This document shows positions 12,160 to 18,028 of a stretch of 64,000 nt of DNA, one piece after another. Origin of the DNA: Diadema antillarum. Its lineage: Eukaryota. Each line of letters starts with the position of its first letter. The first letter of the stretch is position 1. The translations under genes were made by a program, and so were the position numbers. Location: assembly GCF_040938485.1 (NCBI RefSeq), contig NW_027271370.1, positions 1,054,001 to 1,118,000 of the forward strand, in the 5' to 3' direction. Under the pieces are notes generated by a model, which was not told the origin of the DNA, did not search any database, and saw only the letters and a program-made list of their open reading frames with translations.

Positions 12160-12500
12160 CTTGTCTTCTTGTTCAGCTTTCAGTTCCTTTCCTATTTCTC
12201 GGCACTTGTTTTGGTATTATAATGGTATCTTCACTGAATGCGTGTGGAGCTAGCCAGGCAGCTCGCTATGACTTTAAATGGCGGACATGCATACACACAC
12301 GCAACTAGTGAGTAAAAACAACATGACAACAACAACAACAACGCGACGATCCCATTCTCTCTTTGTATGTAGCTCATAGCGGAACGGAGCCCTCTATGTT
12401 CGGGCTGGTCGCAGTTACATGCTCCGTTGAGATTGAATGTACCTCAGAATCGTTATTGTTGGAATGGGGGTGTTTTTGAAGGTGAGTAGACTCATGGTTA
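12160..12500. promoter_or_regulatory. Putative bidirectional promoter region with a YY1-like motif
   Basis: CpG-enriched relative to flanks. AAATGGCGG (reverse complement CCGCCATTT, YY1-like) at 12276-12284. Outward-facing donors occur at 12160 (minus) and at 12307 and 12481 (plus). Confidence 0.55.
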
Positions 12501-15500: not shown

Positions 15501-18028
15501 GATGGAGCTAAGTTAATACTATGAGTAAGTACATTGATGACTGCAGTTTCAAGTTTGTTCATGGCAGAATCAGGGGTGCCCCCCTTGGGACCCAGGGGAG
15601 GGAGGTGAGGAGGGGTCCTAATGGGGCCTAAATTGTACATTTTTATCTTCTTTTTTAGAACCCCATGACCCATTTTCACCAAACTTGGCAGGTAGCATCC
15701 CTAGGGGGTTTAGAAACTCAATTTGTTAAAATGGGCACCATGCCCCACCCAGGGGGCCCCCAGGGGACCCCCAGGGGGCCCAAAGGGGGCCCAAATCCCC
15801 CAAAATTAAGGAATCTTTAAAAATCTTCTTCTCTAGAACCAGAAGTGATGGAGCTAAGTTAATACTATGAGTTAGTACATTGATGACTGCAGTTTCAAGT
15901 TTGTTCATGGCAGAATCAGGGGTGCCCCCCTTGGGACCCAGGGGAGGGAGGTGAGGAGGGGTCCTAATGGGGCCTAAATTGTACATTTTTATCTTCTTTT
16001 TTAGAACCCCATGACCCATTTTCACCAAACTTGGCAGGTAGCATCCCTAAGGGGTTAGGATCTCAATTTGTTAAAATGGGCACCATGTCCCACCCAGGGG
16101 GCCCCCAGGGGGGCCCAAACCCCCCAAATGAAGGAATCGTTAAAAATTTTCTCTAGAATCAGAAGTTATACAGCTAAGATAATACTATGAGTGAGTACAT
16201 TAATGACTGTAGTTTCGAGTTTGTTCATAGGAGATCCAGGGGTGCCCCTCTTGGGGGCAGGGGTGGAGGGGGGGGGGGGGGGGGTTGGTTAGGAAGGTCC
16301 AAATGGGGGCCTGAATCGTACATTGTCATCTTCTTCCTGAAAACCTCATGATAGATTTTCGTCAAACTTGGCAGGTAGCATCCTTAGGGGGTCAGGATCT
16401 CAATTTATCAAAATGGGCACCATGCCCCACCCAGAGGGCCCCAGGGGGCCCCCAATTCCCCAAATTAAGGAATCTTTAAAAATCTGGGCCCTTATTGTAC
16501 ATTTTCATCTTCTACTTCAGAATGCCTGGTCAAATTTTGGTAGAGCTGTGAATAATTTAGATTAGTGACTGCGTGAAAGGTGAACTTGCGATACTCAGGT
16601 GAGCGCTAGACCCGCGGGTCTCTTGTTTCAGTTTGAAGTAGGCTTTCATGAATTTACAGTTCTGAGCATGAGAGGTCCTTTACATACTCTTTATTTTCAA
16701 CTCGGTAGGTAATAACATTTTCGAGGATAGTATTATTGCCTTGAAAGTTGGTATTGGTCATGAATAGAATGTACCAGGAGTGGTTACCATGGAGTTTCAC
16801 ATCTCGTTCATTGCACGGAGTATTATTGGGAGAGATTCCACTCGAATAGACCCCAAACTTCAAAGCCCCTTTTCTCAGCACACCCTTTTGTAGAGGATGT
16901 GCTTTCTTTCCACATTTGAATTGGGTTATGAAGTCTGTTTACAGTGAATAATAGCTCATTTCAAAGCTTACAGGCTCCTCTTTCAGAATCTGCCCTTAAC
17001 TAAAATCAGGCTGACGACTTTTTGATGTGTTTTTCTTTTGATGGAGAATCACATATAGTGCTTTTGATGACATGAATGTTGTGGTTCTATGTTTTTGTGA
17101 TTCACTGATACAAGCTGCATTACTGTGCTACATCAATGAAAGAATAGGCTGTAATTGGTGCAACTTTTTTCTTGGTCAAGACTTCTGTATTAGGAAATTT
17201 TATAGCGCATTCTAGCAAGCTGTTACATGGTAGTCTTTAATCAATACTCACAACCATTTGATTCTGTACTGTGCAGTTACAGGAGACCCAAGGCCACTGC
17301 TTGTCTTTCTACCCTGGCTGACAGCCACTGCATCATCAGCGAACCGCTATCGTGAATTGTATGCTGCCCGTGGTTTCAATGTGCTGACAGTGTGGGGGAA
17401 GATGTCCTACTTCTTGTGGCCTGCGTGGGCCAAGCCTGTGGCCAGAGAGCTCACAGAGTACCTGGACACCTGTACCAAGGGACCCCTCCTTATTCACAGC
17501 ATGTCAATTGGTGCCTACTTGTATGCCGTTACACTCAAGCACGTTGATGACAACAAGGTAAAATACTCTGCCCTTATCCCAAGAGTGAGAGGTCATGTGT
17601 ATGACAGCATCGTGGTTGGTACTCTCGAAGAAATGGCAACTGGAGTTTGTAAGGTTATTTCGCCAAAAAATTCTTTCCTACAATCGCTGATCTTCAGGTC
17701 ATGTTTGTTGTACTTTTCTGCCACCAAGCCACACACAGTTGTGCCTTACAATGCATTCATTGATGTCTGCTTCAATTCTCCAGTGAAGACACCCAAGCTG
17801 TGCTTCTATTCACTGTCTGATGAGTTGTGTTGTCCTGACAGTATGAAGCGTCTCATGAACCACTGGAGGGACAGGTATGACTTGGATATCATGGAGAAGT
17901 CTTGGGAAAAATCACCTCATGCTGCCCATCTCAGACATGACCCAGAGACATACCAGGGACTTCTTGATGTGTTCCTTAAGAAGCTGGAATTAGGTGACAT
18001 ATCTCCCAGACTGTTATCTAAGCTCTAG
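12278..18028 (+). CDS. DUF829/TMEM53-family alpha/beta-hydrolase-fold protein with C-terminal PTS1 (SKL); 3 coding exons with alternative first exons
   Basis: Exon 1a 12278-12307 (MADMHTHTQL|gtgagt) or exon 1b 12464-12481 (MGVFLK|gtgagt). Exon 2 is 14031-14175 (LGVGAFRSMPIY...HPETT, phase 0 in, phase 1 out). Exon 3 is 17283-18028. Products are 306 or 302 aa. Motifs LLVFLPWL, LIHSMSIGAY, VYDS, FYSLSDELC and WEKSPHAAHLRHDPETY match the DUF829 pattern as I remember it. Ends ...PRLLSKL*. One-to-one orthology to vertebrate TMEM53 is not established. Confidence 0.85.
13011..13785. mobile_element. 775-bp TIR element with a 4-bp TSD (AACA), in intron 1 of the DUF829 gene
   Basis: aaca|GGGCAATTCCGCAGTTAG ... 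CTAACCGCGGAATTGCCC|aaca (17/18 TIR match). Four internal copies of GTAACGTTACTAACC. Confidence 0.7.
14509..16625 (-). mobile_element. Helentron/HINE-like element, copy B (inverted), in intron 2 of the DUF829 gene
   Basis: Same termini as copy A in reverse orientation, inserted in a T-run (tttttt|AGCTCACCTGAG ... CTCTTG|ttt). The marker motif recurs 6 times, with periods of about 325-345 bp. Confidence 0.85.

What the first reader, a model, noticed from the sequence alone, without database searches (positions are those of the whole stretch)
12278..18028. Alternative first exons plus PTS1: a candidate mitochondria/peroxisome dual-targeted DUF829 (TMEM53-family) hydrolase
Seen in sequence: two short ATG-initiated exons 186 bp apart both end in a consensus GTGAGT donor in phase 0 and fit the same acceptor at 14031. 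Exon 1b gives MGVFLKLGVGAFRSMPIYAYRNNPVRMASCSNRNAKVTRLS, with no acidic residue in the first 41 aa and seven K/R. Exon 1a gives MADMHTHTQL plus the same downstream sequence. In-frame Met codons at 14055 and 14091 could produce shorter forms lacking most of the leader. All forms end ...PRLLSKL*. Established: basic, acid-free N-termini are typical of mitochondrial presequences, -SKL is the canonical PEX5-bound PTS1, and vertebrate TMEM53 is described as a nuclear-envelope protein. Inference: promoter or start choice may switch this enzyme between mitochondria and peroxisomes, which would be a localisation system I do not know for this family.
Basis: partly seen in the sequence, partly recalled or inferred. 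Interest (0 to 1): 0.72.

Follow-up and report, generated by a model that had tools for sequence, protein, structure and literature searches.

The report
Peroxisome-tagged DUF829 hydrolase of sea urchin
This is a normal three-exon sea-urchin gene for an unstudied serine-hydrolase-like protein whose conserved -SKL tail marks it, and much of its animal family, as probable peroxisomal enzymes; the proposed extra first exon has no support, although relatives do have annotated forms with and without the leader.

Summary
The letters are as described. The window is Diadema antillarum, and the exon 1b + exon 2 + exon 3 model equals RefSeq XP_071498383.1 (304 aa, Pfam DUF829).

- **Exon 1b:** it is conserved in D. 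setosum.
- **Exon 1a:** its sequence is not alignable in D. setosum. It is in no protein on record for this gene. It would keep 20 of the 26 leader residues, so it is not a convincing targeting switch.
- **SKL:** it is invariant in all seven echinoid sequences. Among the 150 best family representatives plus four further echinoid sequences, 63 of 154 end in a canonical PTS1. These include a brachiopod, annelid, hemichordate, amphioxus, lamprey, fish, frog, lizard and Drosophila.
- **Fold:** the AlphaFold model (pLDDT 90) is a soluble alpha/beta hydrolase. It has a Ser131-Asp236-His269 triad, no membrane helix, and disordered ends at residues 1-30 and 300-304.
- **Met27 (14091):** it is invariant in echinoids. 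It is the annotated start of leaderless isoforms in S. purpuratus and L. pictus, where exon 1 supplies only the ATG.
- **Diadema leader:** it is basic and acid-free, but scores weakly on simple presequence measures.

Verdict: probably a peroxisomal hydrolase with an optional N-terminal leader. Mitochondrial delivery is inferred, not shown.

The parts
12278..12313 (+). Candidate 'exon 1a' (ATG 12278, 10 codons, GTGAGT donor 12308-12313). Unsupported as an exon.
   Evidence: The letters are confirmed. It is identical in the second D. antillarum haplotype but not alignable in D. setosum. No matching protein is in the cluster. The ATG has T at -3.
12413..12463 (+). Sequence upstream of exon 1b. 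Its 5' two thirds (about 12413-12445) are conserved, so it is a likely 5'UTR or core promoter. It contains an in-frame ATG at 12437.
   Evidence: About 30 bp are identical between D. antillarum and D. setosum, while the flanks do not align. In D. setosum the ATG matching 12437 is followed at once by TAA.
12464..12481 (+). Exon 1b coding part (MGVFLK), with donor GTGAGT at 12482.
   Evidence: It equals the RefSeq protein start. It is conserved in D. setosum as MGVCLK|GTGAGT. The Kozak context is G at -3 and G at +4.
13018..13786 (.). 769-bp insertion in intron 1 with 12-nt inverted ends (GGGCAATTCCGC ... GCGGAATTGCCC).
   Evidence: It is absent from the second D. antillarum haplotype. The ends were read.
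14007..14030 (+). Last 24 nt of intron 1, with an in-frame ATG (MSFTFDFQ) that reads into exon 2.
   Evidence: ORF 14007-14180. The D. setosum RefSeq model starts at the matching ATG.
14031..14175 (+). Exon 2: leader residues 7-26, Met27, and the first beta-hairpin of the domain.
   Evidence: The hairpin is at residues 36-48 in the model.
14091..14093 (+). Met27 codon. It is invariant in echinoids and is the start of the leaderless RefSeq isoforms of S. purpuratus and L. pictus.
   Evidence: The Kozak context is A at -3 and G at +4.
14508..16620 (.). 2.1-kb repeat element in intron 2: ends GCTCACCTGAG / CTCAGGTGAGC, (TCGTCCG)x12, and a 346-bp unit x5.4.
   Evidence: It is absent from the second haplotype and from D. 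setosum. Other copies lie in the window.
17277..18028 (+). Exon 3 coding part with the stop codon: the DUF829 alpha/beta-hydrolase body.
   Evidence: Pfam PF05705, E 1.2e-24, 87.9 bits against a cut-off of 25. Model pLDDT is 90.
17504..17506 (+). Ser131 codon, the putative nucleophile in HSMSIG.
   Evidence: S/D/H occupy these three columns in 142 of 154 family sequences. Ser131 is nearly invariant, and D236 and H269 are invariant, in 100 sequences.
17819..17821 (+). Asp236 codon, the putative triad acid.
17918..17920 (+). His269 codon, the putative triad base.
18017..18025 (+). Codons for the C-terminal Ser-Lys-Leu (PTS1).
   Evidence: It is invariant in seven echinoid sequences. The tail at residues 300-304 has pLDDT below 50 and residues 291-304 have no secondary structure, so it is probably exposed.

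Best explanation
The locus is a three-exon Diadema antillarum gene for a soluble DUF829 alpha/beta hydrolase of 304 aa, with a putative Ser131-Asp236-His269 triad.

Its free, disordered C-terminal -SKL is a PTS1. The default destination is therefore the peroxisomal matrix, through PEX5.

Residues 1-26 form a disordered, basic, acid-free extension ahead of the conserved Met27. This extension is an optional add-on. It is included when translation starts at the ATG of the first exon (exon 1b here). It is left out when translation starts at Met27.

In camarodont urchins exon 1 carries nothing but the ATG. Any transcript with another 5' end therefore yields the leaderless form.

The extension most likely sends part of the protein to mitochondria. 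This would follow the well-known scheme of dual-located enzymes that combine an optional presequence with a PTS1.

**Shown:** the gene model, family, fold, triad conservation, PTS1 conservation, conservation of the leader reading frame and of Met27, and the annotated isoforms in relatives.

**Inferred:** import into peroxisomes, the mitochondrial role of the leader, and use of Met27 in Diadema.

Exon 1a is probably not part of the system.
For: **Identity**
- The window model equals XP_071498383.1.
- Pfam DUF829, 87.9 bits.

**Fold**
- AlphaFold pLDDT 90.1, pTM 0.86. The ordered domain covers about residues 33-293. pLDDT is below 50 over most of residues 1-30 (1-4, 9-23, 26-30) and over 300-304.
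- Foldseek finds esterases and lipases.
- No segment reaches a membrane-helix hydropathy; the Kyte-Doolittle 19-residue maximum is 1.23.
- The triad columns read S/D/H in 142 of 154 sequences.

**PTS1**
- SKL is invariant in two Diadema species, S. purpuratus, two Lytechinus species and a transcript contig.
- 63 of 154 family sequences end in [SAC][KRH][LM], against about 0.3% expected from residue frequencies. Lys is the commonest residue at -4, and the positions upstream are highly variable.
- Named PTS1 members: Lingula, Patiria, Antedon, Owenia, Saccoglossus, Conger, Salvator, Xenopus, Petromyzon, Branchiostoma and Drosophila.

**Optional leader**
- Met27 is invariant, and the reading frame upstream of it stays open with in-frame indels in all echinoids.
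- RefSeq X2 of S. purpuratus and L. pictus starts exactly at that Met.
- Exon 1 in both species ends ...ATG|GTAAAT.
- A spliced transcript contig carries exon 1 joined to exon 2.
- Other RNA contigs carry the intron-1 tail with a TAG directly before exon 2, which leaves only the internal Met usable.
- Alternative N-termini on a PTS1-ending body are annotated in Conger, Xenopus, Petromyzon and Drosophila.

**Leader character**
- Diadema: 4 K/R, no D/E.
- Camarodonts: hydrophobic moment 0.71-0.77, an FHHLL/FYHLL motif, and Arg two or three residues before the Met.
- Patiria, Antedon, Xenopus X2 and Drosophila X1 have N-termini of typical presequence appearance.
Against: - There is no localisation experiment for any member, and no paper in the held library links DUF829 or TMEM53 with peroxisomal import as a finding.
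- No Diadema RNA evidence could be reached. The cluster holds only genome-derived proteins.
- The Diadema leader is a poor presequence on simple measures. Arg+Ala+Leu+Ser make up 31%. Its hydrophobic moment of 0.55 is no higher than in shuffles (p 0.47). It has no TOM20-type motif.
- In Diadema a start just upstream of exon 2 would meet the in-frame ATG at 14007 and keep most of the leader. The clean on/off logic seen in camarodonts is therefore not evident here.
- The exon 1b ATG has a good context, which argues against much leaky scanning to Met27.
- An internal Met near the domain start is only weakly enriched in PTS1-bearing relatives (Fisher p about 0.03). The result depends on the window chosen and is not corrected for kinship.
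Confidence: 0.5

Rival explanations
1. Peroxisome only. The PTS1 works, but the N-terminal extension is not a targeting signal. It could be a flexible tail, a regulatory piece or a membrane-association piece. The annotated 5' variants would then be ordinary transcript noise.
For: The Diadema leader scores weakly on composition, amphipathicity and TOM20-motif tests. Leader presence and PTS1 show no association across the family: 36 of 99 with a leader have a PTS1, against 27 of 55 without. The RNA contigs with the intron-1 tail also retain intron 2, so they may be unprocessed RNA.
Against: The reading frame upstream of Met27 is kept open in every echinoid, with in-frame indels and a retained basic, acid-poor make-up despite low sequence identity. 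Acidic residues are about halved in the first 25 residues of leader-bearing relatives. Several relatives have N-termini of typical presequence appearance.
Confidence: 0.3
2. Two alternative first coding exons, 1a and 1b, driven by different promoters, switch the enzyme between mitochondria and peroxisomes.
For: Both mini-exons have an ATG, an open frame, a consensus GTGAGT donor in phase 0, and fit the acceptor at 14031. The 1a letters are identical in two D. antillarum haplotypes. Alternative first exons are annotated in relatives.
Against: Exon 1a has no alignable counterpart in 6 kb upstream of the D. setosum gene, whereas exon 1b does. No 1a protein is in the 90% cluster. Such mini-ORFs arise by chance at about 0.15 per 1.75 kb. 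The 1a ATG has T at -3. Both forms would share residues 7-26, so the leader is not removed; only one Asp and two His are added.
Confidence: 0.08
3. Mitochondrial enzyme. The N-terminal signal dominates, and the C-terminal SKL is rarely or never used.
For: N-terminal presequences usually win over a PTS1 because they are read first (established knowledge of dual-signal proteins). Many relatives have a leader and no PTS1 (63 of 154).
Against: SKL has been held invariant across echinoid orders while the residues before it vary. A PTS1 is present in about 40% of the sampled family. Such conservation is not expected for an unused tripeptide.
Confidence: 0.07
4. A membrane protein of the nuclear envelope or ER, or a lipid-droplet protein, like vertebrate TMEM53/NET4. 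The SKL would be incidental.
For: It belongs to the same Pfam family, and UniRef names the S. purpuratus orthologue 'Transmembrane protein 53'.
Against: There is no hydrophobic segment of membrane-helix strength. The model is a compact globular hydrolase. The PTS1 is conserved.
Confidence: 0.04

Closest known systems
TMEM53 / NET4 (vertebrate DUF829 protein, PF05705)
   Same: Same Pfam family and the same alpha/beta-hydrolase core with a Ser-Asp-His arrangement. A review describes TMEM53 as having a hydrophobic two-helix lid over the catalytic site (PMC11878206).
   Different: TMEM53 is described as acting at the nuclear envelope on SMAD traffic (PMC11878206, citing Guo et al. 2021). The urchin protein has no predicted membrane helix and ends in a conserved PTS1. 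Frog, lamprey and conger eel carry PTS1-ending family members that RefSeq labels only 'uncharacterized LOC', which hints at a separate paralogue. Orthology to TMEM53 was not tested.
Enzymes located in both mitochondria and peroxisomes through an optional N-terminal presequence plus a C-terminal PTS1, such as alanine:glyoxylate aminotransferase, malonyl-CoA decarboxylase and yeast carnitine acetyltransferase Cat2
   Same: Same logic. Alternative transcription or translation starts include or skip a basic leader, a conserved second Met follows the leader, and a PTS1 sits at the C-terminus.
   Different: The protein family is unrelated. Here nothing has been shown experimentally. In camarodont urchins the switch would rest on a first exon that holds only the ATG.
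Yeast peroxisomal alpha/beta-hydrolase lipases Lpx1 and Ldh1
   Same: Alpha/beta hydrolases with a PTS1 in the peroxisomal matrix. PMC11878206 lists them under DUF829.
   Different: That assignment was not verified here, because no yeast sequence was examined. None of the named relatives found here is fungal. The substrate of the urchin protein is unknown.

Membership tests
DUF829 (Pfam PF05705) | Match to the family HMM above the gathering score, over the full profile | tested here: met
   87.9 bits against a cut-off of 25, E 1.2e-24, profile positions 1-241 of 242.
Alpha/beta-hydrolase fold serine hydrolases | Central beta-sheet fold with the nucleophile elbow Ser, an acid and a His in the canonical order | tested here: met
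   Model pLDDT 90. Foldseek top hits are esterases and lipases, E 1e-9 to 1e-8, TM 0.5-0.6. S131/D236/H269 are conserved in 142 of 154 sequences. Catalytic activity itself was not tested.
TMEM53-type membrane protein | A transmembrane or strongly hydrophobic anchoring segment | tested here: not met
   The maximum Kyte-Doolittle 19-residue mean is 1.23, on the buried strand and helix around Ser131.
TMEM53-type membrane protein | Orthology to vertebrate TMEM53 | not tested
   No vertebrate TMEM53 sequence was placed in the tree. Source names such as 'TMEM53-like' are similarity labels.
PTS1 (PEX5-dependent) peroxisomal matrix proteins | C-terminal tripeptide [SAC][KRH][LM] at the very end of the protein | tested here: met
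   SKL followed by the stop at 18026.
PTS1 (PEX5-dependent) peroxisomal matrix proteins | The tripeptide is conserved in orthologues while the upstream tail varies | tested here: met
   Invariant in seven echinoid sequences. 63 of 154 family sequences carry a canonical PTS1, and the entropy of positions -5 to -12 is 3.2-3.9 bits.
PTS1 (PEX5-dependent) peroxisomal matrix proteins | An accessible, flexible C-terminus | tested here: met
   Residues 291-304 have no secondary structure, and residues 300-304 have pLDDT below 50. This is a model only.
PTS1 (PEX5-dependent) peroxisomal matrix proteins | PEX5 binding and SKL-dependent import | not testable with these tools
   Needs experiments. No PTS1 predictor was on hand.
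Mitochondrial matrix presequence | N-terminal stretch of 15-40 residues rich in Arg/Lys and lacking acidic residues | tested here: met
Mitochondrial matrix presequence | Amphipathic helix and a TOM20-type hydrophobic motif | tested here: inconclusive
   Diadema: moment 0.55, not above shuffles, and no motif. Camarodonts: 0.71-0.77 (shuffle p 0.10-0.18) and FHHLL/FYHLL. These are heuristics of my own, not a calibrated predictor.
Mitochondrial matrix presequence | Score from a trained predictor (TargetP, MitoFates), or import and cleavage | not testable with these tools
   No such predictor is available.
Alternative first exons | Each first exon is conserved in a sister species | tested here: not met
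   Exon 1b is conserved in D. setosum. The exon 1a region is not alignable there.
Alternative first exons | Transcript junctions for each first exon in this species | not testable with these tools
   No Diadema RNA-derived protein is in the collection for this gene.
PTS2 (PEX7-dependent) proteins | N-terminal nonapeptide [RK][LVIQ]xx[LVIHQ][LSGAK]x[HQ][LAF], conserved, in a free N-terminal segment | tested here: not met
   KVTRLSDHL (residues 36-44) fits the pattern. Only the two Diadema sequences among 154 do so. Camarodonts have Thr at position 1. The stretch is a beta-hairpin of the folded domain.

The most novel reading that the evidence does not exclude
A whole, unstudied branch of the DUF829 family across bilaterian animals is an ancestral peroxisomal serine hydrolase, often located in mitochondria as well. 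Its destination would be set by 5'-end choice. In camarodont sea urchins the setting would be a first exon that carries nothing but the start codon, so that any other 5' end gives the leaderless peroxisomal form. The nuclear-envelope TMEM53 of vertebrates would then be a derived paralogue that lost the PTS1.
Probability: 0.3. Interest if true: 0.65.

Novelty: new member of a known kind. Interest (0 to 1): 0.42.

Why it matters
If the prediction holds, DUF829 proteins supply a new peroxisomal matrix enzyme, probably an esterase or lipase. It would be present from flies and brachiopods to lampreys, fish, frogs and lizards. None of the 20 clusters whose names were looked up contained a mammal, but that is too small a sample to say mammals lack it. 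If they do, that could explain why it has gone unnoticed.

The prediction would also change how the only studied member, TMEM53, is viewed. It would add a simple, testable case of organelle choice by first-exon or start-codon use.

For this window alone the result is modest. The gene is an already annotated 'uncharacterized protein' with a canonical signal, and the exon 1a idea that made it look special does not hold up.

Tried and rejected
1. **PTS2.** The Diadema nonapeptide KVTRLSDHL fits the consensus. It is confined to Diadema and lies in a structural hairpin, so it was rejected.
2. **Membrane anchor.** No segment reaches membrane-helix hydropathy.
3. **Internal Met as a family-wide signature of dual starts.** Only a weak, window-dependent enrichment was found (Fisher p 0.03-0.27), uncorrected for kinship. 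It is kept as a hint only.
4. **Association between leader and PTS1 across the family.** None was found.
5. **Diadema transcripts.** The word search with exon 3 found three clusters only, and the Diadema cluster holds only genome-derived RefSeq proteins. The junctions could therefore not be checked. I ran no further search on short N-terminal fragments, because that result made a hit unlikely.
6. **Repeats.** The exon 1a region is single-copy in the window, so it is not part of a repeat.
7. **Literature.** Searches for DUF829, PF05705, TMEM53 with peroxisome, CG8245, and NET4 with lipid droplet gave no localisation study of a PTS1-bearing member.
8. **Other ORFs.** The five other ORFs of at least 130 aa in the window have no Pfam match.
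9. **Solved structures.** A sequence search of the PDB found no DUF829 structure, only remote carboxylesterase matches.
10. **Tree.** The family tree is a quick FastTree with many weak branches. It shows a well-supported echinoid clade, all with a PTS1, and at least 6 to 30 changes of PTS1 state. It cannot tell gain from loss. Nineteen short, long or triad-incomplete rows were left out, as listed in that call.

No contig taken for human was met. The N run at 5657-5810 was left as it is.
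Full report
**What is in the sequence**

The window has about 38% G+C and is full of introns and repeats.

- ATG at 12278, ten codons, then GTGAGT at 12308.
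- ATG at 12464, six codons, then GTGAGT at 12482.
- A pyrimidine-rich acceptor ending at 14030.
- Exon 2 at 14031-14175, with a phase 1 donor GTTAGA.
- Exon 3 at 17277-18025, ending Ser-Lys-Leu, followed by TAG.
- In-frame Met codons at 14055 and 14091.

The spliced 1b form has 304 residues.

**Identity**

- The exon 3 translation matches Pfam DUF829 over the whole profile (87.9 bits).
- The word search found three clusters, all echinoid.
- The window's 1b model is letter-for-letter XP_071498383.1 of Diadema antillarum. A second haplotype or contig gives XP_071476566.1, with three substitutions.
- Orthologues are on record from D. setosum, Strongylocentrotus purpuratus, Lytechinus variegatus and L. 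pictus.

**First exons**

- I fetched the D. setosum locus (L001) and the second D. antillarum haplotype (L002).
- Exon 1b is conserved in D. setosum as MGVCLK followed by GTGAGT. About 30 bp upstream of it are identical, while the flanks do not align.
- The exon 1a region is identical in the two D. antillarum haplotypes. It has no alignable counterpart in the 6 kb upstream of the D. setosum gene.
- The 90% cluster of the Diadema protein holds three sequences, and none has the 1a start.
- An ATG-opened stretch ending in phase 0 at GTGAGT occurs 0.08-0.09 times per kb per strand in this window. One such stretch near a real first exon is unremarkable.
- Joining 1a to exon 2 would keep residues 7-26 and add one Asp. 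It would not take the leader away.
- Two more in-frame ATGs exist. The one at 12437 is followed by TAA in D. setosum. The one at 14007, in the intron-1 tail, is where the D. setosum RefSeq model starts.
- No Diadema RNA-derived sequence could be reached, so actual exon use stays open.

**The conserved Met and the leaderless forms**

- In the alignment of seven echinoid sequences, Met27 (14091) is invariant. The residues before it are poorly conserved in sequence, but the frame is always open, and the stretch is basic and poor in acidic residues.
- RefSeq isoform X2 of S. purpuratus and of L. pictus (276 aa each) starts exactly at that Met.
- In both species the first coding exon consists of the ATG alone...ATG|GTAAAT. 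The whole leader lies in exon 2.
- A spliced RNA contig from a Strongylocentrotus-like run shows a 166-nt 5'UTR, that ATG, and exon 2.
- Seven RNA contigs from other runs encode a form truncated at the N-terminus. The five longest carry the last 68 nt of intron 1 joined to exon 2, with a TAG directly before exon 2, so only the internal Met could start the protein. All seven retain intron 2, and six show a spliced 3'UTR intron, so they may be incompletely processed RNA.

**The family at large**

- A profile of the echinoid sequences found 1029 relatives at E of 0.001 or better.
- I analysed 154 sequences: the best 150 representatives plus four further echinoid sequences. Of these, 63 end in [SAC][KRH][LM]. 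In the 150 representatives SKL occurs 33 times, AKL 15 and ARL 5. Another dozen or so end in near-PTS1 tripeptides such as SNL.
- From residue frequencies I expect about 0.3%.
- Lys is the commonest residue at -4, and the tail further upstream is highly variable.
- Named PTS1 members are a brachiopod, an annelid, a hemichordate, a sea star, a feather star, amphioxus, lamprey, conger eel, frog, lizard and Drosophila.
- Several have RefSeq isoforms that differ only at the N-terminus.
  - Conger: X2 against X3.
  - Xenopus LOC100486876: four starts.
  - Petromyzon LOC116945618: three starts, one of them leaderless.
  - Drosophila sulfurigaster TMEM53: X1 looks like a presequence, and X2 is hydrophobic.
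- Patiria and Antedon have typical-looking presequences followed by a Met just before the domain.
- A quick tree gives a well-supported echinoid clade, all with a PTS1. It needs between 6 changes (forced by well-supported branches) and 30 changes (on the tree as drawn) of PTS1 state.
- Leader presence and PTS1 are not associated.

**Structure**

- With a 100-sequence alignment, AlphaFold gives pLDDT 90.1.
- The domain is ordered over about residues 33-293. pLDDT falls below 50 over most of residues 1-30 and over 300-304.
- A beta-hairpin at residues 36-48 belongs to the fold.
- The nearest solved structures are esterases, lipases and acyl-peptidases at TM 0.5-0.6. There is no DUF829 structure.
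- Ser131, Asp236 and His269 are conserved.
- No segment is hydrophobic enough for a membrane helix.

**Leader quality**

- No trained predictor was available, so I used simple measures.
- The Diadema leader has 4 K/R and no D/E. It is low in Arg/Ala/Leu/Ser, has an unremarkable hydrophobic moment, and has no TOM20-type motif.
- Camarodont leaders do better on all three measures and have Arg two or three residues before the Met.
- The mitochondrial reading is therefore plausible at family level and only moderate for Diadema itself.

**Most likely mechanism**

- The protein is a soluble serine hydrolase taken into peroxisomes through its PTS1.
- An optional basic leader, included or skipped by 5'-end or start-codon choice, probably diverts part of it to mitochondria.
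- My estimates: peroxisomal import via SKL about 0.75; a mitochondrial role for the Diadema leader about 0.4-0.45; real use of exon 1a about 0.1.

**Comparison with what is known**

- The logic is that of known dual-located enzymes with an optional presequence and a PTS1. That comparison rests on my own knowledge.
- The family is that of TMEM53, which is described at the nuclear envelope (PMC11878206).
- No paper in the held library reports a peroxisomal DUF829 protein of animals.
- One review lists yeast Lpx1 and Ldh1 under DUF829. I did not verify that.

**Verdict**

The PTS1 and the optional leader hold up; the 1a/1b switch does not.
- This is a new member of a known kind.
No human contig was met. 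The N run at 5657-5810 was left untouched.

Noticed in passing
window 14508-16620: A 2.1-kb non-autonomous element lies in intron 2. It has 11-nt inverted ends (GCTCACCTGAG / CTCAGGTGAGC), a (TCGTCCG)x12 microsatellite and a 346-bp unit repeated 5.4 times. It is absent from the second D. antillarum haplotype and from D. setosum. Arrays of the same unit lie at about 4498-4998, 7483-8614 and 40764-41905 on the minus strand, and at L002:1-1230.
   Followed up: partly
window 13018-13786: A 769-bp insertion in intron 1 has 12-nt terminal inverted repeats (GGGCAATTCCGC ... GCGGAATTGCCC) and repeated GTAACGTTACTAACC motifs. It is polymorphic, being absent from the second haplotype, and single-copy in the window.
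   Followed up: partly
window 12437-12463: An in-frame ATG 27 nt upstream of the annotated start would add MYLRIVIVG. In D. setosum the matching ATG is followed at once by TAA. Whether the transcript starts upstream of it is unknown.
   Followed up: partly
window 14007-14030; L001:6001: An in-frame ATG in the last 24 nt of intron 1 reads through the acceptor into exon 2. The D. setosum RefSeq protein (306 aa) starts there instead of at the conserved exon 1b. This hints at a transcription start just upstream of exon 2, or at a model built without 5' evidence.
   Followed up: partly
L003:8001-8009 and L004:8001-8009: In S. purpuratus and L. pictus the first coding exon ends with the start codon itself (ATG|GTAAAT). 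Exon 1 therefore contributes only Met1, and exon choice alone decides whether the leader is translated.
   Followed up: yes
L006-L012 (Logan RNA contigs, runs SRR28370571-87): All seven contigs retain intron 2, and six show a spliced 3'UTR intron. The five longest (L006-L010) also keep the last 68 nt of intron 1. Their first 70-90 nt do not match the S. purpuratus locus. They may be partly processed RNA or transcripts from an internal start.
   Followed up: partly
window 14136-14162 (residues 36-44): KVTRLSDHL fits the PTS2 nonapeptide consensus. Only the two Diadema species among 154 relatives fit it, and it lies in a beta-hairpin of the domain. It is probably a coincidence on a conserved structural motif.
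   Followed up: yes
Patiria miniata proteins P0164, P0165, P0017, P0166, P0167: The sea star has several near-identical loci or isoforms of this gene on one scaffold: LOC119737747 with X1-X3, plus LOC119737764 and LOC119737767 at 239 aa. This suggests tandem copies or alternative body exons.
   Followed up: no
It lies inside a mechanically listed ORF (5647-6117) that has no Pfam match.
   Followed up: no
window 18075-18080: An AATAAA lies 47 nt after the stop codon. Similarity to D. setosum continues to at least 18400, so the 3'UTR may be longer.
   Followed up: no
PMC11878206, section 2.5.6: The review lists yeast ICT1, LPX1 and LDH1 as DUF829 proteins. This was not checked here and may be a looser use of the family name.
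   Followed up: no
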